From positions 124,001-188,000 of the IMG/VR virus record IMGVR_UViG_3300043411_000942: DNA of 64,000 bases. The stretch is one strand, 5' to 3'. The translations under genes and the position numbers were made by a program. Under the pieces are notes generated by a model that worked only from the letters and a program-made list of their open reading frames with translations, made no database searches and had not been told where the DNA came from. This document shows positions 10,656 through 28,888 of the stretch, one piece after another (position 1 is the stretch's first letter; each line of letters opens with the position of its first letter).

Positions 10656-10816
10656 TAGAGAGTACCAATCCTGTCAGGCAGGGGTAATCTCTAGTTCAAC
10701 CTTGAACCTGGATATAGGGGTTGGACCTTAGGTGGGAGGTAGGCAATATCTCCCACCTAAGGCGTTTCTCTCAACTCGACTCGCTTGAAGCGAGTCACTC
10801 ACGAGACATAAATCAG

Positions 10817-12703
10817 ATGAACAAAGAAAATCTAGGCCCAGCAGAGCGCATTCTGCAAACGTTGCTTCAGTACACGGATCATGCTGTCCACAACCGACCA
10901 GGGTACACCGTAAAGGACACCTCTGTTGTCGGAGTGAAGTGGCAACCTGTCACTCACAAGGTAGAGGGTGACGAGAAGGTAGTTTACACTCTCTCGAAGG
11001 TGGGCAAGAAGACTGTCCGTACGAGGTTGGGTGTCCTTCAGCCGGACAATCGAATCACGGGCCCTAGGGGGGCCTTGATTGGGGAGTACCGACCAGCCGG
11101 TCTGTTCCCTGAGGTCGTGACCTGGATGTACCGTCAGGTCACGGAGGTGTGGAAGCTGGATAACGAGTTCGCTGCCCGTTGGGCGAGCTACGCTTTCAAG
11201 CAAGAGCATCGAGACCTGAAGGTCATCCTGGCAGCCCTGATGCTTGTACAGTCCCGTAAGGGAGATCCTGTTCTGGATCAAGGCAAGGTAGCCTTCTACG
11301 ATGAAGACTTCCGAGACGTTGGAGAGGCCATGTTGCTGCTCCATGACAAGGACAACAAGGCTGGGTTGAACCCCAAGCTACTTCTTCGTGTCCAGGAGAT
11401 TCTGACCCTTCCTGGAGTGGTTGCAATCAACCGAGAGCTTGGTTTCTCTCGATCCCTACGTAACCCGGCTCTGGGTCGTTGGCCCAAGGCTGTAACTAAG
11501 TGGCTTCGGTTCCGAGAGGAAAACCCCAAGCTGCTTGCAGGACTCGTTAAGGCTGGATTCAAGTCCACCGTAATGGAGTTGGCACGTAAGGTAGGGTACA
11601 AGCCGGAGTCTTCAAAGTTCTTTGAGGCTCTTCGGTGGAAGCAGGGACAAGCCAAGGACGGTCACCGTTCAATTGCCATTGGGCAAGCGGTAACCGCTGC
11701 GGAATCCTGGAATGGTCTGACTGAAGAGCAAGTCTGTCAAAAGATTGCGTCTACTCGACCTAACTGGAAGCGGATCGTAGGTCTTCTTCCCAAGGAGGTT
11801 GGAGTTACCCGAGCAATCGTGGCTGTAGCGATTGAGTCTGGGTCGTTTAGCGACAAGGACTTGATCATTGCAACCCCGACGCTGGAGGAGCTTGGTCTCC
11901 TGGATGTTCAGGACATTCGAGCCCGCTGGGTTCGAGCCACGAAAGAGGCGGATGACATGCGTGCGGCGAACATTGCCACACGAGTCAAGAGCCAAGCGAC
12001 CAAGGAAGTTCTACAGGATGCTGCGGACACAGCAATCAAGAAGGTTGTAGAGCAGGTCATGAAGGGGATTCGAATCTACTTCATGGTTGACATCTCGGGA
12101 TCGATGGAAGGCGCTATTGAGTCCGCAAAGGGCTACATCGGTAAGTTCCTTCAGGCGTTCCCGAAAGACAAGGTCCATGTGAGCGTGTTCAATACTTCTG
12201 GGCGAGAAGTCCAAATCCCACACGCGTCAGCGGCTGGGGTGGAGAATGCGTTCAAGGGCATTAGGGCAGGAGGCGGTACGGACTATGGGGCTGGCGTTCG
12301 AGCCCTCATGAAGTTCAAGCCTCAGGCTGACGAGGATGTCATCTTCTTCTTCGTGGGAGATGAAGAGGCGAGTGAGTTTTCGACTGCGGTTAGAGATTCT
12401 GGCCTTTCTCCAGTTGCTTTCGGATTTGTAAAGGTTCGAGCAACTACTGGAGCTGGGGCTTGGAGAGCTACACAGTACGAAACTTCGGCAGTACGAGACA
12501 CTGCAACGAACTTGGGAGTTCCTTGCTTCATGGTGGACGCAAATACGTTTGACGACCCCTACGCAATTCCACGTACGATGCGGAATCTCATCTCAGCTAC
12601 CCCTGTTGGTGTAGCTCGTAAGCAGACCGAGACCACGCGAGTGGGTCTTGTGGACCTGATTCTAAAGACCGATATCATGCAGAAGCCGACTTGGGCTTCG
12701 TGA
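10817..12703 (+). CDS. helical (Ro60/TROVE-like) domain plus C-terminal vWA domain protein
   Basis: vWA MIDAS VDISGSM, AGGGTDYG, VGDE; ~410 aa basic helical N-terminus; TROVE assignment is inference; start ATG 10817. Confidence 0.75.
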   Translation: MNKENLGPAERILQTLLQYTDHAVHNRPGYTVKDTSVVGVKWQPVTHKVEGDEKVVYTLSKVGKKTVRTRLGVLQPDNRITGPRGALIGEYRPAGLFPEVVTWMYRQVTEVWKLDNEFAARWASYAFKQEHRDLKVILAALMLVQSRKGDPVLDQGKVAFYDEDFRDVGEAMLLLHDKDNKAGLNPKLLLRVQEILTLPGVVAINRELGFSRSLRNPALGRWPKAVTKWLRFREENPKLLAGLVKAGFKSTVMELARKVGYKPESSKFFEALRWKQGQAKDGHRSIAIGQAVTAAESWNGLTEEQVCQKIASTRPNWKRIVGLLPKEVGVTRAIVAVAIESGSFSDKDLIIATPTLEELGLLDVQDIRARWVRATKEADDMRAANIATRVKSQATKEVLQDAADTAIKKVVEQVMKGIRIYFMVDISGSMEGAIESAKGYIGKFLQAFPKDKVHVSVFNTSGREVQIPHASAAGVENAFKGIRAGGGTDYGAGVRALMKFKPQADEDVIFFFVGDEEASEFSTAVRDSGLSPVAFGFVKVRATTGAGAWRATQYETSAVRDTATNLGVPCFMVDANTFDDPYAIPRTMRNLISATPVGVARKQTETTRVGLVDLILKTDIMQKPTWAS

Positions 12704-12717
12704 AAGAGTAGAGCGCC

Positions 12718-13680
12718 ATGGGGTGGAGAGACTTGCTTCCAGAAAAAGAGGAGACTGTAATCTTCCCTTGGGTTGGAGGTAGGTCTCTTCGCTCCGGCTC
12801 TCGTACTTGGAAAATTCAAGGTGCGCTACCAGACGAGCATGGATGGTATGCGTTTCGGATAGTGGGGCGTAATGCCACTCTAGGTGGACCTAGTGGTCCC
12901 GTAGTTGGGATGCTCGATCCTTACAAGGATGTTGGTTACCTAGTAGGGGACCACTTTGTATCTGACTCAATCCAGGCTCAGAGTACTACTCAGGCGTTGC
13001 GCCAGATGAGCCCAGTGGGGCTAGTTGAGCCAGGACTAGATCGGTTCGCTAGGGTCTCCGTAGGGCGAGCGTTTGAGGGCGGCCCTCTTATCTACATGGG
13101 ACTAGAGTTCCCTTTGGGCCCGGAGGAGCAAGTCCTTCAAATGTTCCTAGACCAAGCTCCAACCGTTCGTGAAGTCAAAGGAGTTACTCCAGCGCTCGAA
13201 GCTGCCTTTCAAGTGGAAACTTGGCAACGTCTGGAAACAGAGAGGTTGCGAGTAGAAGCAAACGAGCGTCGCCGATTGGCGGAGGAGCAACGACGTAAGG
13301 AAGAGCAACGTCAACAGATTTTGAACCAGCTTGGGGACGCAGTTGGTCGCCGTCAAATGGCTCAACTCGACTTTGCAGAAGCTGCAAAAGCCTCCCTTGC
13401 GGTAGGGGGCGCTACTTACCTAGACCATCGTAGAGCCGTCACGAGAGGTGAGATGGTTGTAAGGTTCCGGTACATGGACCGTAGGTTCGAATGTGTGTGC
13501 GACGAGAAGACACTACAGATCATTGACTCTGGAGTGTGCCTTACTGCACACAATGATGATGATGGGTTTGACGAGGGAGTGAAAGGAGACCGTTTCTTTA
13601 CTCTTGAGTCCCTGCCATCCGTGTTGAAGGAAGCTCAGGATCTTGGCCGTCTTGTGGTGTATAGGCACGTAGATGGCTAA
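12718..13680 (+). CDS. conserved protein, possible E2-like C-terminal domain
   Basis: Coiled coil followed by IIDSGVCL...TLESLPSVL, reminiscent of the E2 GxxCL catalytic segment; lies in a Ubl operon. Confidence 0.5.
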   Translation: MGWRDLLPEKEETVIFPWVGGRSLRSGSRTWKIQGALPDEHGWYAFRIVGRNATLGGPSGPVVGMLDPYKDVGYLVGDHFVSDSIQAQSTTQALRQMSPVGLVEPGLDRFARVSVGRAFEGGPLIYMGLEFPLGPEEQVLQMFLDQAPTVREVKGVTPALEAAFQVETWQRLETERLRVEANERRRLAEEQRRKEEQRQQILNQLGDAVGRRQMAQLDFAEAAKASLAVGGATYLDHRRAVTRGEMVVRFRYMDRRFECVCDEKTLQIIDSGVCLTAHNDDDGFDEGVKGDRFFTLESLPSVLKEAQDLGRLVVYRHVDG

Positions 13681-14239
13681 CGAAAAAGACCGCTCAGTTT
13701 GGGTTTTCAGGCTGAGTAACGATCCAGTAGGTGTGCGCCCCATCGAGGATGAAGTGCGCCCCATCGAGGATGAAGTCGCGGACGCACTGCAACGACAGGA
13801 CAAAGCCCTCATGGCTAGCAGAGAAGAAGAGCACGTCTCAGCTGTCCCAATCTATGGGGCTCCACTCTACGTGATGCCCGCCAAGGTACCCGTAGGTACT
13901 GGATTTGCAGACCCAGCTTACGAAGAAGAAGTCAACATAAACGTCTCAGCCGTTTCAGCCTATGGCGGGGCTCCACCTTTAGATGATGATCATGACTACG
14001 AGTTTGACGTCTGCTTGGAAGACTACTCTCAAGCCACCCTTACAAAGGTGGTCCAAGTTGTACGTAGGGTGCTCCCCATGGACCTAGCGAAGGCTGTTAC
14101 TCTAGTAAAGAGCACTCCTGTGGTTTTAGCCTCTAAGGTTAGCATCTCAGATGCTTTGGAGCTTGAGTCAGAGTTCACTAAGGTTGGAGCGCAAGTACGA
14201 GTTGTAAACTCGTACACCAAAGAGGTGGTACGAGCATGA
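13673..14239 (+). CDS. ribosomal protein L7/L12 C-terminal domain protein
   Basis: EFDVCLED...KVVQVVRRVLPMDLAKAVTLVKSTPVVL...VSISDALELESEFTKVGAQV. Confidence 0.78.
   Translation: MANEKDRSVWVFRLSNDPVGVRPIEDEVRPIEDEVADALQRQDKALMASREEEHVSAVPIYGAPLYVMPAKVPVGTGFADPAYEEEVNINVSAVSAYGGAPPLDDDHDYEFDVCLEDYSQATLTKVVQVVRRVLPMDLAKAVTLVKSTPVVLASKVSISDALELESEFTKVGAQVRVVNSYTKEVVRA
13733..13774 (+). repeat. perfect 21-nt tandem duplication (VRPIEDE x2)
   Basis: GTGCGCCCCATCGAGGATGAA twice. Confidence 0.9.
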
Positions 14240-14703
14240 GCATAGAAACAGGAGTGGTGGTAAACCTTCAAGGGGAGCCGATTCACTGGCACCTCCCACC
14301 AGGACGGTCTGCTGGGTACCTACCGGATAGTAGAGACCTTTGGGATGTGTTCTGGGAGAATCGTGACAACCTACTCGGGTTTGCACACAGCCACCCAGGG
14401 GCAGGCTACCCTCACCCTTCTCACGAAGATCTTACAACCTTCTCAGCGGTAGAAGCTGGCTTGGGTCGAAGGTTGCTTTGGTGGGTTATGAGTAAGACCT
14501 CGGTAGTGGTGTATAGCTGGGTCGGTCCTGGTTTGTACGACTACCGAGTGAACTCTGACCGAGAGGCTAAGTATGAGAGTGGGGACAGCTCAAGCCAACA
14601 GGAACTAAGTTGGGTTGCGAGGTTGTACTCTCTATCTTACCTAAACAATGAGGGTAGTCCAGAGATGGACTACATGAACGTAGACCTTGGCGGAGATAGA
14701 TAA
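14236..14703 (+). CDS. JAB/JAMM metallopeptidase
   Basis: N-terminal E, then HSHPGAGYPHPSHED (HxH-x-S-xx-D motif). Confidence 0.9.
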   Translation: MSIETGVVVNLQGEPIHWHLPPGRSAGYLPDSRDLWDVFWENRDNLLGFAHSHPGAGYPHPSHEDLTTFSAVEAGLGRRLLWWVMSKTSVVVYSWVGPGLYDYRVNSDREAKYESGDSSSQQELSWVARLYSLSYLNNEGSPEMDYMNVDLGGDR

Positions 14704-15272: not shown

Positions 15273-15506
15273 ATGAACTTCCAGACCCTTACGACTCGAT
15301 TGAAGACAATCGGGGAGATTGTGGAGCCAGCCAACGGACCTAAGGTAGGGGATTCTTACCTAGACCTTCACACTTCCTCAGAGGGAGTAATCTGGAAGGT
15401 CATGGAGGTTGACTGGGTTCACGACACCGTCAAGCTGAAAGGCTTGAAAGGCCATGTTGAGTGGGCTGGGTACTACTCAGTTCTCAACTTGATGAGAAAA
15501 CTCTGA
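15273..15506 (+). CDS. hypothetical protein
   Basis: 77 aa ORF after a promoter motif; TGATG-coupled to E1. Confidence 0.6.
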   Translation: MNFQTLTTRLKTIGEIVEPANGPKVGDSYLDLHTSSEGVIWKVMEVDWVHDTVKLKGLKGHVEWAGYYSVLNLMRKL

Positions 15507-16081
15507 TGAAAAACATAGTAGTAGTGGGAGTAGGGGCTCTTGGTTCACACCTTGTCCCTCTACTCCGTAACCTGGACGCAACTGTAAAGGTTGTGGACTT
15601 TGACCGAGTAGAGACAAAGAACACGATGTCTCAGTTCCACGCAAAGTCTTCTGTCGGTAAGTCGAAGGTTCAAGCCCTTCAAGCTACCATGCAGTTCTTG
15701 TGGGGCGTAAAGCTGCAAGTCATACCCCACAAGCTTACTACAGACAACCAAGAGCAGCTCCTTGGAGGAGCAGACCTTCTTGTCGACTGCCTAGACAACG
15801 GCCCTTCCAGGAGACTTGTACAGGACTATGCGAAGCGTAAAGGTGTCCCATGCCTACATGGGGCGTTAGCAGCGGATGGTTCGTTTGGTAGGGTAATCTG
15901 GACAGAGTCCTTTACCATCGATGAGGCTCCTGGAGTTGGTACTCCAACCTGTGAGAACGGAGAGCACCTAGCGTTCATCTCCATCGTGGCCTCCTATCTA
16001 GCTCAGGTTACCAGTGCTTTTCTTGCTACTGGTACCAAGTTGGGGTATAGTGTTCATGCAGGTGGTGCGGTTAGGACGTAG
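15506..16081 (+). CDS. ThiF/E1-like Ubl-activating adenylyltransferase
   Basis: GVGALG, VDFDRVETKN, GKSKV, VDCLDN, single Cys in PTCE. Confidence 0.9.
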   Translation: MKNIVVVGVGALGSHLVPLLRNLDATVKVVDFDRVETKNTMSQFHAKSSVGKSKVQALQATMQFLWGVKLQVIPHKLTTDNQEQLLGGADLLVDCLDNGPSRRLVQDYAKRKGVPCLHGALAADGSFGRVIWTESFTIDEAPGVGTPTCENGEHLAFISIVASYLAQVTSAFLATGTKLGYSVHAGGAVRT

Positions 16082-16149
16082 GAAAAATCGCACGCTTAGC
16101 AAAAGAAAATCTTGCCCGCCCTCTACTCCTGGTGTAGAGGTACTTAACA

Positions 16150-16207
16150 GGAAGAGGTGACCTAATCGGTAGGTACCTCAGGCTGGTTCGAATCCACCCT
16201 CTTCCCC
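16150..16207 (+). ncRNA. anticodon-armless tRNA-like RNA
   Basis: GGAAGAGG/CCTCTTCC, D arm ACCT-AATCGGT-AGGT, TTCGAAT loop, no anticodon arm. Confidence 0.6.
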
Positions 16208-16208
16208 T

Positions 16209-16341
16209 GCTTCTGTCTACTACCTGAATCTTACAAGCAATGTTGGTTCGAATCCAACTGCCCCTTCGGGGGTATGGCGGAATGGAAAACGCAATCACCC
16301 GATAAGTGATCAATACCCAGATTCAGGACTCAGTCAGAAGC
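16209..16341 (+). ncRNA. Y RNA (YrlA)-like permuted tRNA mimic #1
   Basis: GCTTCTG/CAGAAGC and CCTGAATCT/AGATTCAGG enclose T arm, UUCG-capped acceptor hairpin, then D arm. Confidence 0.78.
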
Positions 16342-16348
16342 TACTTTC

Positions 16349-16476
16349 GCCGCATATGACTCCAGGTGGGGTCACTCCCGTTTAAAGGAATAAACCGACA
16401 CTCCGCTCTCAATCCTCGCAAGAGGGTTAACTTGAAGTGTCTACAAGAATGGTTGGTTCGAGTCCAACATGCGGCA
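16349..16476 (+). ncRNA. tRNA-like RNA #2 with inserted motif stem
   Basis: GCCGCAT/ATGCGGC acceptor, T arm; GACACT...AGTGTC insert carries the shared internal loop. Confidence 0.7.
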
Positions 16477-16478
16477 CT

Positions 16479-16600
16479 AGAGACGGTTACTACGAGGTGT
16501 TTACAAGCATAGTCCAATGGTAGGACATCAGCCCTGATAGCTGACTGTATAGGTTCAATTCCTATTGCAATCAATCCAACACCTCAACTCAATCGTCTCT
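16479..16600 (+). ncRNA. tRNA-like RNA #3 nested in motif stem
   Basis: AGAGACG/CGTCTCT and GAGGTGTT/AACACCTC enclose D, anticodon-like and T arms. Confidence 0.75.
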
Positions 16601-16705
16601 TATATCTATGTTACCATTCAAGATTACCTCTATCTTGCTCTAGGTCGTGTGGTGCAAAGTTAGGAGCAGTGCAGAAAAACCGTATCGTTGCTACTTAGTT
16701 ACTTA

Positions 16706-16836
16706 GCCGGACATAGAGGGTGGGTCCCCTCATTCGTAATGAAGCACGAAAAGCACCAGCATCTCTTCTCGCCCTCTTTACCGAGGGTTCTCTGAGATGC
16801 TTACAAGAAATCTTGGTTCGAGTCCAAGGTCCGGCG
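16706..16836 (+). ncRNA. tRNA-like RNA #4 with inserted motif stem
   Basis: GCCGGAC/GTCCGGC, T arm CTTGG-TTCGAGT-CCAAG, AGCATCTC/GAGATGCT insert. Confidence 0.7.
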
Positions 16837-16838
16837 CT

Positions 16839-16967
16839 AGAGCGATCACTCTGGGATGTTTACACGCTAAAATTGCTCAACTGGTAGAGCAGCCGCCTCA
16901 TAAGCAGCATGTTGCTGGTTCAAGTCCAGCTTTCAGCATCAAAACAACATCCAATCTCGATCGCTCT
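16839..16967 (+). ncRNA. RNA #5: whole tRNA(CAT) cloverleaf (16866-16938) nested in motif stem
   Basis: AGAGCGATC/GATCGCTCT and GGATGTT/AACATCC flank the cloverleaf. Confidence 0.75.
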
Positions 16968-16975
16968 TACTACTT

Positions 16976-17060
16976 GGAATGGAAACCTATCGGGGATAGG
17001 CTTGGTTTTGAAAACCAAAGGAGCGAGAAATCGCCTGGGGGTCGGGACCTCTTCATTCCT
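16976..17060 (+). tRNA. tRNA-Ser(TGA), 8/4 fold
   Basis: GGAATGGA/TTCATTCC, T stem GGGG/CCTC, long variable arm. Confidence 0.82.
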
Positions 17061-17065
17061 CTCTT

Positions 17066-17148
17066 GCGTGGGTGGCGAAATGGCAGACGCAGTAGATTCA
17101 AAATCTACCACCCTTAGAAGTGTACGGGTTCAAGTCCCGTCCCACGCA
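17066..17148 (+). tRNA. tRNA-Leu(CAA)
   Basis: GTAGA-TTCAAAA-TCTAC. Confidence 0.92.
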
Positions 17149-17161
17149 CCGAGGTGACTTC

Positions 17162-17410
17162 ATGGAGCCTGTAAAGAAGGTACACGGTATCGGGTACGCC
17201 TCTCAACCTGATCATCAATTCCGATGCGACGGTAAATGGGGACAGCCTGCATGGGCTGGAGCTAATCAGAGCATGGGGTCGGATGGTCGTATCCGAGATG
17301 GCTCAGGGGAGCCTCTCACTCCAGAGCGTGTGTATCTATCAGATGAAGACGACCGACTCTTCTCGTTTGATGAGTCCCTCGTCACATGTGAAGCTTGTCT
17401 CGGTAAGTAG
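17162..17410 (+). CDS. hypothetical protein
   Basis: GAGGT RBS, ATG 17162, C-terminal VTCEAC. Confidence 0.6.
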   Translation: MEPVKKVHGIGYASQPDHQFRCDGKWGQPAWAGANQSMGSDGRIRDGSGEPLTPERVYLSDEDDRLFSFDESLVTCEACLGK

Positions 17411-28389: not shown

Positions 28390-28744
28390 GGGGTTGAAAT
28401 AGTTTCGACGTTGGAGAGAAGTAGTGCTTGCATGTAGGCGGTCCTTGACCCGCCTTGACCAATCAAGGAACGTTAATTGCGAACGATAACGCATACGCGA
28501 CTCCCGCTCTCGCAGCGGCTTGAGTAGCTGTCCTCCAGGGAGATCGTCCTGGTACCTGAACGGGGGCATCAATCACTAGGGCTGGTCGAAGAGCTGGGCT
28601 AACCGAGCACGAGATGAGATAAACAGGGTAGATAGGTCCTAGCCGAATCGAGGAACTCAGTTGACGGGGATACGTCAACCAATCATGTGGAAGAAGGCAC
28701 TTACGTATTTCTGGCGGACCCGAGTGCGATCCTCGGCAACTCCA
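28390..28744 (+). ncRNA. ssrA: tmRNA
   Basis: 5' GGGGTTGAAATAGTTTCGAC, 3' GGACCCGAG-TGCGATC-CTCGG-CAACTCC-A, G3:U70; tag 28479-28523 ANDNAYATPALAAA*. Confidence 0.93.
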
Positions 28745-28888
28745 CAGTAATCCCACCCGAAACGGTGGGGTTGAATTTGTAGCAGGCGGTTAAATTGGTT
28801 CGATACTTTTACGTAGAAGAGAGGGACTAGAAGTTCTAGCCCTCGAAAGAGGGTACGGACATGAGGAAGAGGCAAAGGTAGGTGTAAC

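What the first reader, a model, noticed from the sequence alone, without database searches (positions are those of the whole stretch)
16209..16967. Five tRNA mimics share one internal-loop motif grafted at different points of the cloverleaf
Seen: each RNA has a stem - internal loop - 8/9-nt stem strand - TACAA unit. One strand reads GTCTACTA-CCTGAATCT-TACAA (#1), GGTTAACT-TGAAGTGTC-TACAA (#2), GGTTACTA-CGAGGTGTT-TACAA (#3), GGTTCTC-TGAGATGCT-TACAA (#4), GATCACTC-TGGGATGTT-TACAC (#5). The opposite strand reads ACTCAGT, TCTCAAT, ACTCAAT, TCTCGCC, TCTCGAT. Stem sequences differ but keep pairing. The unit closes a permuted T-acceptor-D module (#1, YrlA topology), is an internal insert before the T arm (#2, #4), or wraps a whole cloverleaf (#3, #5). 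It differs from the canonical bulged-C Ro site. Inference: a modular handle-plus-bait design presenting different tRNA faces.
Basis: partly seen in the sequence, partly recalled or inferred. Interest (0 to 1): 0.88.

Follow-up and report, generated by a model that had tools for sequence, protein, structure and literature searches.

The report
Shared RNA handle on phage tRNA mimics
A huge phage carries five neighbouring tRNA-shaped RNAs that share one conserved stem-loop-stem "handle", and the same handle sits beside the same four-gene cassette (one gene has a Ro60-like layout) in over a hundred related phage contigs, so it looks like an undescribed cousin of the Ro/Y-RNA particle.

Summary
All ten quoted strings lie at the stated places, and the five RNAs (16209-16966, + strand) fold as described.

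The handle is: stem A, a roughly 5x5 internal loop with a near-invariant CUC on the 3' strand, an 8-9 bp stem B, then YACA(A/C)G.

It is a real RNA family:
- A covariance model built from other phages finds unit 2 at E 3e-13.
- It finds 129 copies in 70 sources, with strong compensatory change.
- Plain MAFFT plus RNAalifold recovers the long-range stems of the other topologies.

The handle occurs in four settings:
- closing a permuted T-acceptor-D-anticodon body;
- as a giant variable arm of an open cloverleaf, the exact circular permutation of the first;
- wrapping a complete tRNA;
- alone.

The clusters always flank a conserved cassette (vWA protein, orf320, JAB, ThiF/E1), even where no tRNA genes are nearby.

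The vWA protein has a helical-plus-vWA layout. Its best structural matches are Ro60/TROVE, but no sequence method confirms TROVE. Rfam YrlA does not match the handle.

Best reading: a Y-RNA-like ribonucleoprotein with a new handle. Binding and RNA ends are not shown.

The parts
16209..16341 (+). Unit 1, 'T-first' (YrlA-like) topology. Stem A 16209-16218 / 16332-16341; loop ACUA 16219-16222 / ACUC 16328-16331; stem B 16223-16231 / 16319-16327; UACAAG 16232-16237; T arm 16242-16258; acceptor closed by UUCG 16259-16274; D arm 16277-16292; anticodon-like hairpin 16294-16310.
   Evidence: Sequence; MFE z -4.1. In class alignment A6, plain MAFFT plus RNAalifold recovers all six helices, with compensatory change in 32 of 35 pairs.
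16349..16476 (+). Unit 2, 'closed' topology. An open 7-bp acceptor (16349-16355 / 16469-16475), D arm, 8-nt-loop anticodon-like arm, the handle as a giant variable arm (stem B 16397-16405 / 16433-16441, stem A hairpin 16411-16428 closed by GCAA), UACAAG 16442-16447, T arm 16452-16468.
   Evidence: R1 47.9 bits, E 3e-13, not in the seed; fold z -3.9; segment parse.
16479..16600 (+). Unit 3, 'wrap' topology. Stem A 16480-16488 / 16591-16599, stem B 16494-16501 / 16578-16585, UACAA 16502-16506. It encloses a cloverleaf (16507-16568) with only a 3-bp acceptor and a C33 anticodon loop.
   Evidence: Rfam tRNA 46 bits, model positions 5-66; fold z -5.0; class alignment A7 recovers long-range stem B.
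16706..16836 (+). Unit 4, 'closed' topology, paralogue of unit 2. Stem B 16758-16765 / 16794-16801, stem A hairpin 16771-16788, UACAAG 16802-16807, T arm 16812-16828, acceptor 16706-16712 / 16829-16835.
   Evidence: R1 64.6 bits (it is in the seed); fold z -5.6.
16840..16966 (+). Unit 5, 'wrap' topology. Stem A 16840-16847 / 16959-16966, loops ACUC / UCUC, stem B 16852-16860 / 16946-16954, UACAC 16861-16865. It encloses tRNA-Met(CAU) 16866-16938.
   Evidence: ARAGORN and Rfam tRNA 58 bits; fold z -3.5; class alignment A7.
10811..12703 (+). vWA protein (about 630 aa; the ORF is open from 10721). N-terminal beta domain, helical-repeat domain, and a C-terminal vWA domain with invariant MIDAS-type residues. 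It is the first gene of the conserved cassette and the candidate handle-binding protein.
   Evidence: Pfam VWA_2; more than 1692 homologues; invariant residues; AF2 model; best Foldseek hits are TROVE/Ro60; Atlas neighbours are TROVE; no sequence-level TROVE signal.
12718..13680 (+). orf320, the second conserved cassette gene, with no recognisable family.
   Evidence: No Pfam, PHROG or NCBIfam hit. It follows the vWA gene wherever the held sequence extends that far.
14236..14703 (+). JAB/MPN-type peptidase-like ORF, the third conserved cassette gene.
   Evidence: Pfam Prok-JAB, E 2e-5, 24.9 bits, just under the 25-bit cut-off; conserved position.
15461..16081 (+). ThiF/E1-like adenylyltransferase, the last cassette gene. 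The RNA cluster begins less than 150 nt downstream.
   Evidence: Pfam ThiF 2e-24; nearest solved relatives are Uba4, TcdA and MoeB; RNAs directly follow it in most loci.
16100..16207 (+). Unit 0: a hairpin followed by an armless tRNA-like RNA (8-bp acceptor, D arm, T arm, no anticodon arm) and no handle. It lies directly upstream of unit 1 and is probably part of the same transcript.
   Evidence: Sequence and fold. It shares metatranscriptome contigs with unit 1.

Best explanation
The five RNAs belong to a widespread, undescribed family of huge-phage non-coding RNAs built from two modules.

Module 1 is a constant handle. It reads: stem A, an internal loop with near-invariant CUC followed by G on the 3' strand and an A-start 5' strand, an 8-9 bp stem B, then single-stranded YACA(A/C)GC on one side and an A/C-rich strand ending in C on the other.

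Module 2 is a tRNA or tRNA-shaped body joined to the handle in different ways:
- at the variable-arm position with the acceptor open ('closed' units 2 and 4);
- the same RNA circularly permuted, with the acceptor capped and the handle open ('T-first' unit 1);
- at the acceptor ends of a complete tRNA ('wrap' units 3 and 5);
- or with no tRNA body at all ('mini', seen in relatives).

I infer that the units are co-transcribed after the cassette. A closed unit is almost always followed within 1-3 nt by an open unit, so tRNA end-processing would separate them.

I also infer that the handle is the docking site for a cassette-encoded protein, most likely the vWA protein with its Ro60-like helical-plus-vWA layout. 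That would give a Y-RNA-like particle in which the handle holds the protein and the tRNA-shaped part engages tRNA-binding factors, or is itself held or checked.

Shown: the structure, the covariation, the family, the topologies and the gene linkage. Inferred: transcription units, processing, protein binding and function.
For: Structure and family:
- R1 hits: unit 2 at E 3e-13, and 129 copies at E<1e-6 in 70 sources.
- In those copies 91.7% of cells pair against 59.7% in shuffles and 37-50% when partners are slid. There are 780 double-change cells against 232 in shuffles.
- T-first class: all six helices come from an unguided alignment, 92.7% paired against 65.8% in shuffles.
- Wrap class: long-range stem B is recovered.
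- Near-invariant CUC, ACA-G and a preceding C across contigs of very different base composition (loci 46-73% GC; one copy 26%).
- GNRA/UNCG-type tetraloops cap stem A.

Autonomy of the handle: mini forms and a closed handle without a T arm exist.

Linkage:
- 110 of 136 descriptor hits lie in the 22.8% of sequence just upstream of the vWA gene or downstream of ThiF (p 2e-46).
- A DNA pattern taken from the RNA alone finds 29 stretches on 27 contigs among 2.9 million viral contigs. At least 15 of those contigs were already known to carry the vWA gene, and two more carry 23-30% identical vWA relatives, one about 300 nt from the RNAs.
- In Myxococcota-binned contigs the RNAs sit 100-900 nt upstream of the vWA gene. 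L108 and L110 have no tRNA gene within 8 kb.

Ro-likeness:
- Top Foldseek PDB hits are phage phiLo TROVE/Ro60 and Xenopus Ro60 (E 3e-7 to 4e-5, about 550 aligned columns).
- The top Swiss-Prot model is C. elegans RO60.
- 58 of the 100 nearest Atlas clusters fall in one TROVE-annotated set, and several smaller sets also carry TROVE.
- A relative's T-first core gives a partial YrlA match.
- Phage Ro60 proteins with adjacent Y-like RNAs are documented (PMC4201824, PMC12135203).

Weak expression hint: in low-depth metatranscriptome assemblies, contigs cover units 0-1, 3 and 4 far more than the flanking ORFs.
Against: - No binding data.
- TROVE is not detectable by Pfam even at E<=10 in 29 members, by a profile against PDB sequences, or transitively through remote relatives.
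- The isolated helical domain gives no significant structural hit. Its best TM is 0.34 to Ro60, at E about 1. Whole-protein TM to Ro60 is only about 0.2.
- The handle lacks the GNCGAA / CGAA-in-bulge feature of bacterial and phage Y RNAs (PMC4201824, PMC12135203).
- The RNAs are as tightly linked to ThiF, JAB and orf320 as to the vWA gene. In most loci they abut ThiF, 3-6 kb from the vWA gene.
- Many wrap units contain apparently normal tRNAs with canonical anticodon loops, which would also fit a maturation role.
- RNA ends are unknown. The metatranscriptome data are assembled contigs and could include DNA.
Confidence: 0.45

Rival explanations
1. The handle is a processing or maturation signal. 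A host or phage endonuclease (RNase III-like, or a splicing-type enzyme) would cut in the symmetric internal loop. That would release, circularise or re-open unusual tRNA precursors (leader-trailer stems, permuted genes, an 'intron' in the variable region) from the polycistronic transcript.
For: - Wrap units hold tRNAs with canonical 7-nt U33 anticodon loops and many different anticodons.
- Leader and trailer pair as in rRNA and T7 RNase III processing stems (my own knowledge).
- Closed and T-first forms are exact circular permutations, as in permuted tRNA genes of Cyanidioschyzon (my own knowledge).
- Units abut each other.
Against: - Removing the handle from closed or T-first units would leave about 18 nt between the anticodon and T stems, not a normal tRNA.
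- Many bodies are not decoding tRNAs. They have 8-nt or C33 loops, capped acceptors or 3-bp acceptors.
- Mini forms have nothing to mature.
- The loop is not a bulge-helix-bulge (3-nt bulges 4 bp apart). It has invariant bases, which RNase III sites do not need.
- Simple processing stems would not track one protein cassette in loci that lack tRNA arrays.
Confidence: 0.18
2. The handle recruits a different cassette protein, and the RNAs are substrates or cofactors rather than scaffolds. For example, the ThiF/E1-like adenylyltransferase (with JAB and orf320) could modify or tag the attached tRNA or tRNA mimic, or use it to target ubiquitin-like chemistry. The vWA protein would play another role.
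For: - In most loci the RNA cluster starts directly after ThiF.
- The nearest solved ThiF relatives include Uba4 (Urm1 / tRNA thiolation) and TcdA (tRNA ct6A).
- The cassette is conserved as a unit in 49 of the non-redundant viral loci and in the genome-bin loci long enough to show it.
Against: - In several divergent viral loci and in the genome-bin loci the RNAs lie immediately upstream of the vWA gene, far from ThiF.
- In L075 a 30%-identical vWA relative is directly followed by the RNAs with no JAB or ThiF between them, although only 4 kb is held.
- No ubiquitin-like or E2 gene, and no tRNA-modifying catalytic partner such as a TtuA-type enzyme, was recognised in the cassette.
- Wrap-tRNA anticodons do not fit the TcdA substrate set.
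Confidence: 0.2
3. The RNAs act on their own as decoys or sponges for host tRNA-targeting factors such as anticodon nucleases or tRNA-binding defence proteins. The handle would be only a stabilising or tertiary-structure element, and linkage to the cassette would reflect shared regulation.
For: - Every body keeps the tRNA elbow: T loop GUUCRA and a D loop with GG.
- Copy number is high, up to 7 per locus.
- Phage tRNAs are known to counter tRNA-cleaving defences (my own knowledge).
Against: - Mini forms lack any tRNA body yet keep the handle.
- Invariant single-stranded bases in a loop and junction across contigs of very different base composition suggest a specific partner.
- Linkage persists in both gene orders and without tRNA arrays.
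Confidence: 0.1
4. There is no RNA function. The similarity would come from recent duplication, or from a DNA-level repeat or mobile element inside a tRNA array.
For: - Units 2-3 and 4-5 look like a recently duplicated dimer.
- HNH endonuclease genes are scattered through the array.
Against: - Compensatory changes, including strand-specific G-U pairs, occur in more than 120 copies from phages whose vWA proteins are 51-70% identical.
- Descriptor hits are 280 on the cassette strand against 105 on the opposite strand.
- Stable tetraloops cap stem A.
Confidence: 0.02

Closest known systems
Bacterial and phage Y RNAs of the YrlA type with Ro60/Rsr (Rfam RF02553; PMC4201824; Thermus phage phiLo Ro60 with Yrl1/Yrl2, PMC12135203)
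   Same: - Several small RNAs are encoded next to a gene for a helical-repeat plus vWA protein.
- The design is modular: a 5'/3' stem-loop-stem plus a tRNA-like domain.
- Unit 1 has the YrlA order (T arm, capped acceptor, D arm), and a relative's core gives a partial YrlA hit.
- A handle-only 'mini' form parallels YrlB.
   Different: - The handle sequence and shape differ: a CUC / A-start 5x5 loop plus YACAAGC, not GNCGAA or a CGAA bulge.
- No Rfam match on the handle.
- The protein has an extra N-terminal beta domain and no detectable TROVE signature.
- The bodies include an anticodon arm, whole tRNAs and the unpermuted cloverleaf form.
- The RNAs travel with an E1-like / JAB / orf320 cassette, not with RtcB/RtcA.
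Circularly permuted and intron-containing tRNA genes processed at bulge-helix-bulge motifs (Cyanidioschyzon merolae, archaea; my own knowledge)
   Same: The same tRNA-shaped RNA exists in two circular permutations, one with the acceptor ends joined by a short loop. A stem-loop-stem sits at the junction.
   Different: - The junction lies in the variable region, not in the usual anticodon- or T-loop positions.
- The loop is not a 3-4-3 bulge-helix-bulge.
- Excision would not give a canonical tRNA.
- No splicing endonuclease or RtcB gene was seen in the ORFs scanned.
Class II tRNAs and tRNA-Sec with long variable arms
   Same: Closed units have a 7-bp acceptor, D, anticodon and T arms, and a long extra arm between the anticodon and T arms.
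   Different: - The extra arm is about 45 nt with a conserved internal loop. It is followed by a roughly 10-nt conserved single strand before the T stem.
- The anticodon loops of units 2 and 4, and of several relatives, are 8 nt.
- Not called by ARAGORN or by Rfam tRNA.
RNase III processing stems flanking rRNAs and phage T7 early RNAs (my own knowledge)
   Same: In wrap units the leader and trailer pair into a two-stem helix with an internal loop around a stable RNA.
   Different: The loop and junction bases are invariant. The same module also occurs inside cloverleaves and on its own, and it is genetically tied to one protein cassette.

Membership tests
YrlA / Y RNA (Rfam RF02553, RF00019) | Matches the family covariance model at or above its gathering score | tested here: not met
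   No Y_RNA or YrlA hit at E<=10 on window 15900-17300. In L013 there is only a 26.5-bit partial hit (gathering score 69) to model positions 30-81, the tRNA-like core.
YrlA / Y RNA | Ro-binding motif (GNCGAAN0-1G near the 5' end, or CGAA in the bulge; GGUCCGA with a bulged C in animals) | tested here: not met
   The handle consensus from 129 copies has CUC, an A-start loop and YACAAGC, and no CGAA motif. The motif definitions come from PMC4201824 and PMC12135203.
YrlA / Y RNA | tRNA-like domain with T arm, capped acceptor-like stem and D arm, between the two strands of a terminal stem | tested here: met
   Unit 1 and 20 relatives: all helices covary.
YrlA / Y RNA | Encoded next to a Ro60/Rsr (TROVE) gene | tested here: inconclusive
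   The RNAs are tightly linked to a vWA-protein cassette, but that protein is not shown to be TROVE (see the Ro60/TROVE rows).
YrlA / Y RNA | Bound by Ro60 in vivo or in vitro | not testable with these tools
   Complex prediction did not fold the protein-RNA job.
Ro60 / TROVE proteins | TROVE domain (PF05731) recognisable by sequence profile | tested here: not met
   - No TROVE hit in 29 members at E<=10.
- A profile against PDB sequences finds only vWA proteins.
- The helical-domain profile finds only 157 proteins in 1.84 billion, and ten remote ones show no TROVE.
Ro60 / TROVE proteins | HEAT-like helical ring closed by a C-terminal vWA domain with a MIDAS site | tested here: inconclusive
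   - The helical domain plus vWA domain and invariant D-x-S-x-S, T, D residues are present.
- Foldseek top hits are TROVE/Ro60 (E 3e-7), but TM is about 0.2.
- The helical domain alone gives TM 0.34 at E about 1.
- Atlas neighbours are mostly TROVE.
- The model's pTM of 0.48 leaves the ring geometry unresolved.
Canonical tRNA | Cloverleaf detected by ARAGORN or Rfam, with a 7-nt anticodon loop | tested here: met
   Met only by the inner part of unit 5 (tRNA-Met, 58 bits) and partly by unit 3 (46 bits, truncated acceptor, C33). Units 1, 2 and 4 are not called.
Permuted / BHB-spliced tRNA genes | Bulge-helix-bulge (3-nt bulges separated by 4 bp) at the junction, with excision giving a canonical tRNA | tested here: not met
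   The loop is a roughly 5x5 internal loop between a 6-bp and a 9-bp stem. Excision would leave about 18 nt between the anticodon and T stems.

The most novel reading that the evidence does not exclude
The handle is the address tag of a new kind of phage ribonucleoprotein machine that is unrelated to Ro. The four-gene cassette (helical-vWA protein, orf320, JAB peptidase, E1-like adenylyltransferase) would use one universal RNA handle to capture tRNAs and tRNA mimics presented in several circular permutations. It could then cage, modify or conjugate them, or use them to steer E1/JAB-type chemistry toward the translation apparatus.
Probability: 0.25. Interest if true: 0.92.

Novelty: new variant of a known kind. 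Interest (0 to 1): 0.8.

Why it matters
What the tRNA-like part of bacterial Y RNAs does is still unknown. This family offers a natural experiment: one constant handle joined to a tRNA body in at least three connectivities, including two circular permutations of the same RNA side by side, plus handle-only forms. That variety should show which tRNA face matters.

It also ties a Ro60-like-layout protein to an E1-like / JAB cassette, an association I found in no paper. It would add a conserved RNA-protein module to huge phages. Their Myxococcota-binned relatives hint at the hosts.

Practically, it gives an RNA family with more than 150 members ready for a covariance-model entry. It also flags that some 'tRNA genes' in huge-phage arrays are embedded in larger RNAs.

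Tried and rejected
- **Loose descriptor.** A structure-only descriptor was not specific: 57 hits in the window against about 50 in shuffles. Adding the CUC anchor still gave about 6 chance hits per 64 kb. I therefore relied on the covariance model, the extra features and the genomic position.
- **Rfam.** No family explains the handle.
- **megablast to GenBank phages.** No match. The protein search found only the metagenomic Virus Rctr197k, so no cultured phage system was found in that collection.
- **TROVE homology.** Pfam at E<=10, a profile against PDB sequences, folding the helical domain alone, VIA-align, the Atlas structure search, AFDB clusters and a transitive profile search all failed to give a significant TROVE link.
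- **Complex prediction.** It does not handle protein-RNA jobs, so it gave no evidence either way.
- **Metatranscriptomes.** Only assembled contigs of about 95% relatives were available, with no read ends.
- **orf320 and the small ORFs between JAB and ThiF.** No family, and no ubiquitin-like signal.
- **Intron / BHB and RNase III readings.** Considered and judged unlikely, for the reasons given under the rival explanations.
- **Promoter/terminator scan.** One weak promoter-like site at 16023-16051 and no + strand terminator inside the cluster; uninformative.
Full report
**Setting.** The window is part of a huge-phage contig (IMG/VR UViG_3300043411_000942, 232,937 bp). It has about 51% GC, and nearly all long ORFs and every tRNA gene are on the + strand. 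ARAGORN finds 45 tRNA genes and a tmRNA between 3.6 and 28.7 kb. HNH endonuclease genes are interspersed, and replication and repair genes (chaperonin, class II RNR, RecA, RecD2-like helicase, clamp-loader subunits) follow. The finding lies at 16209-16967, directly after a ThiF-like ORF.

Thermodynamic folds of the five units reproduce the proposed architectures, with z-scores of -3.5 to -5.6 against dinucleotide shuffles. I make two refinements:
- Unit 1 contains an anticodon-like hairpin as well as the T arm, the UUCG-capped acceptor and the D arm, so it is a permutation of a whole cloverleaf.

Units 2 and 4 are cloverleaves with perfect 7-bp acceptors whose variable-arm position carries the handle closed by a hairpin. 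Units 3 and 5 are cloverleaves whose 5' leader and 3' trailer form the handle. Unit 5 holds a 58-bit tRNA-Met(CAU). Unit 3 holds a 46-bit match with only a 3-bp acceptor and C33.

**It is a real family, not chance.** Structure alone is not specific, so I looked for relatives.
- The upstream vWA ORF has more than 1692 homologues on contigs of up to 659 kb. Sixty-four viral loci were fetched with it.
- blastn and a descriptor scan showed the same module in most of them.
- Forty non-redundant 'closed' RNAs were parsed. All have a 7-bp acceptor (perfect in 39 of 40), D and anticodon arms, the handle, YACAAG plus 1-9 nt, and a GUUCRA T arm. None of these features except the handle and YACAHG was part of the search.
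- Stem A is usually 6 bp capped by GNRA- or UNCG-type tetraloops.
- Covariance model R1 was built from 13 of these, with unit 4 the only one from the window. It scores unit 2 at 47.9 bits (E 3e-13), while no ordinary tRNA of the window passes 20 bits.
- R1 finds 129 copies at E<1e-6 in 70 sources, up to seven per locus.
- On that model-fitted alignment 91.7% of cells pair, against 59.7% in shuffles and 37-50% when partners are slid. There are 780 double-change cells against 232.

The consensus has a near-invariant C before stem B, CUC then G at the 3' loop/stem A junction, an A-start 5' loop, and invariant A-C-A, then A/C, then G after stem B. These bases persist across contigs of very different base composition (loci 46-73% GC; one copy 26%).

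**Topologies.** Open-form hits fall into three classes:
- T-first, about 25 clear copies, including unit 1;
- wrap, about 22 copies, including units 3 and 5;
- mini, about a dozen copies, in which the handle closes only 25-55 nt with no tRNA body.

For 21 T-first RNAs, plain MAFFT plus RNAalifold recovered both long-range handle stems and the T, capped-acceptor, D and anticodon-like helices. Compensatory change occurs in 32 of 35 pairs. Pairing is 92.7%, against 65.8% in shuffles and 30-48% when slid. The selection required handle pairing, but the four inner helices were not selected and covary equally. For 22 wrap RNAs the same procedure recovered long-range stem B and three tRNA arms.

T-first and closed forms have the same order of elements read around a circle. 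They are circular permutations, as expected from a tandem duplication followed by loss of the ends (inference). A closed unit is almost always followed about 60 nt later by an open unit, so the open unit starts 1-3 nt after the closed unit's discriminator. Wrap-type inner tRNAs mostly have canonical U33 7-nt loops with many different anticodons. Units 2 and 4 and several relatives have 8-nt loops.

**Linkage.** tblastn shows a conserved cassette: vWA protein, orf320, JAB, ThiF/E1. It is complete in 49 of the non-redundant viral loci and in the genome-bin loci long enough to show it.
- The RNA cluster begins just after ThiF in the majority of loci and just before the vWA gene in a divergent minority.
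- In 49 non-redundant loci, 110 of 136 descriptor hits fall in the 2.5-kb zones at the two cassette ends, which make up 22.8% of the sequence (p 2e-46).
- Starting from the RNA instead, a 19-base pattern from the linker and T loop finds only 29 stretches on 27 of 2.9 million viral contigs. At least 15 of those contigs were already in the vWA set. Two others carry vWA relatives of 23-30% identity; in L075 the RNAs start about 300 nt after that gene.
- In the species-representative genome collection the cassette occurs in 25 loci, mostly Myxococcota bins plus the isolate Paraliomyxa miuraensis.
- R1 hits sit 100-900 nt upstream of the vWA gene in eight of those loci. L108 and L110 have no tRNA gene within 8 kb.

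The linkage is therefore to the cassette and is not a by-product of the tRNA array.

**The candidate partner.** The vWA protein model (pLDDT 79) has a small beta domain, a helical-repeat domain of about 300 residues and a vWA domain with invariant MIDAS-type residues.
- In favour of a Ro60 relationship: Foldseek's best PDB matches are the TROVE domain / Ro60 of Thermus phage phiLo and Xenopus Ro60 (E 3e-7 to 4e-5 over about 550 columns). The best Swiss-Prot model is C. elegans RO60. 58 of the 100 nearest Atlas clusters fall in one TROVE-annotated set.
- Against: global TM is only about 0.2. The helical domain alone gives nothing significant; Ro60 entries have the highest TM, 0.34. No sequence method detects TROVE. 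A profile of the helical domain finds only 157 proteins among 1.84 billion, none of the ten remote ones tested being TROVE.

I therefore call it Ro60-like in layout and leave homology open.

The ThiF ORF is a generic E1-like adenylyltransferase. Its nearest solved relatives are Uba4, an unnamed ThiF-type protein (PDB 9egc), TcdA and MoeB. orf320 has no recognisable family.

**Comparison with what is known.** Phage and bacterial Ro60 genes with adjacent Y RNAs, some with a tRNA-like T-acceptor-D domain, are established (PMC4201824; PMC12135203; PMC7824862). Unit 1 shares that topology, and a relative's core gives a sub-threshold YrlA match confined to the tRNA-like part. The handle itself fails both defining tests: the Rfam model and the CGAA-type motif. 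I found no paper describing this handle or the cassette association.

**Expression.** Assembled metatranscriptome contigs from about 95% identical relatives cover units 0-1 (16058-16326), unit 3 (16437-16588) and unit 4 (16699-16839). These come from low-depth runs in which the flanking ORFs are barely or not at all covered. This hints at abundant stable RNA, but the contigs carry no end information and could include DNA.

**Verdict.** The most likely mechanism is a Y-RNA-like particle in which the handle binds a cassette protein, most plausibly the vWA protein, and presents or holds a tRNA-shaped module. Rivals remain open: a processing signal, a substrate or cofactor of the E1/JAB proteins, or a protein-free decoy. 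Nothing about binding, RNA ends or function has been shown.

Noticed in passing
window 16976-17059 (+): A cloverleaf that ARAGORN does not call. It resembles tRNA-Sec in shape (Rfam tRNA-Sec 32.4 bits, below the gathering score of 47), with a 6-bp D stem, a long variable arm and the anticodon loop UUUGAAA (anticodon UGA, which reads the Ser codon UCA).
   Followed up: partly
window 16100-16207 (+): A 7-bp hairpin followed by an 'armless' tRNA-like RNA (8-bp acceptor, D arm, T arm, no anticodon arm), directly upstream of unit 1. It shares metatranscriptome contigs with unit 1.
   Followed up: partly
L013 16461-16850 (- strand): Rfam freshwater-1 (RF02979) gives three weak, in-register minus-strand hits (20, 15 and 15 bits; gathering score 72) over the D and anticodon arms of three closed units. 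That orphan motif may be the antisense image of a relative of this family.
   Followed up: partly
window 13673-14239 (+): An ORF with a ribosomal L7/L12 C-terminal domain sits inside the cassette. It was found only in this phage and its 95% relative L015.
   Followed up: partly
L015 16540-16610, against window 16601-16705: The 95%-identical relative carries a handle-only 'mini' unit between units 3 and 4, where the window has unrelated sequence. Metatranscriptome contigs show the same replacement (157 other letters).
   Followed up: partly
L095-L119 (genome contigs): The whole cassette and its RNAs occur on contigs binned as Myxococcota (Kofleriaceae, Polyangiaceae and others) with 63-73% GC. 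The cassette also occurs on a 799-kb scaffold of the isolate Paraliomyxa miuraensis, where no clear handle RNA was found. These could be host hints, mis-binned phage or a cellular copy.
   Followed up: partly
window 28390-28747 (+) and 3691-28259: A phage-encoded tmRNA (tag ANDNAYATPALAAA) and 45 tRNA genes, including odd anticodon calls such as Ser(AGA) and Ser(ACU). HNH endonuclease ORFs lie between them.
   Followed up: no
window 16433-16441 / 16578-16585 and L015 16295 / 16431: Within a closed-open dimer, the 5' strand of the closed unit's stem B can also pair with the 3' strand of the next unit's stem B. This could be an alternative inter-unit pairing or a trace of recent duplication. It is not general in other loci.
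   Followed up: partly
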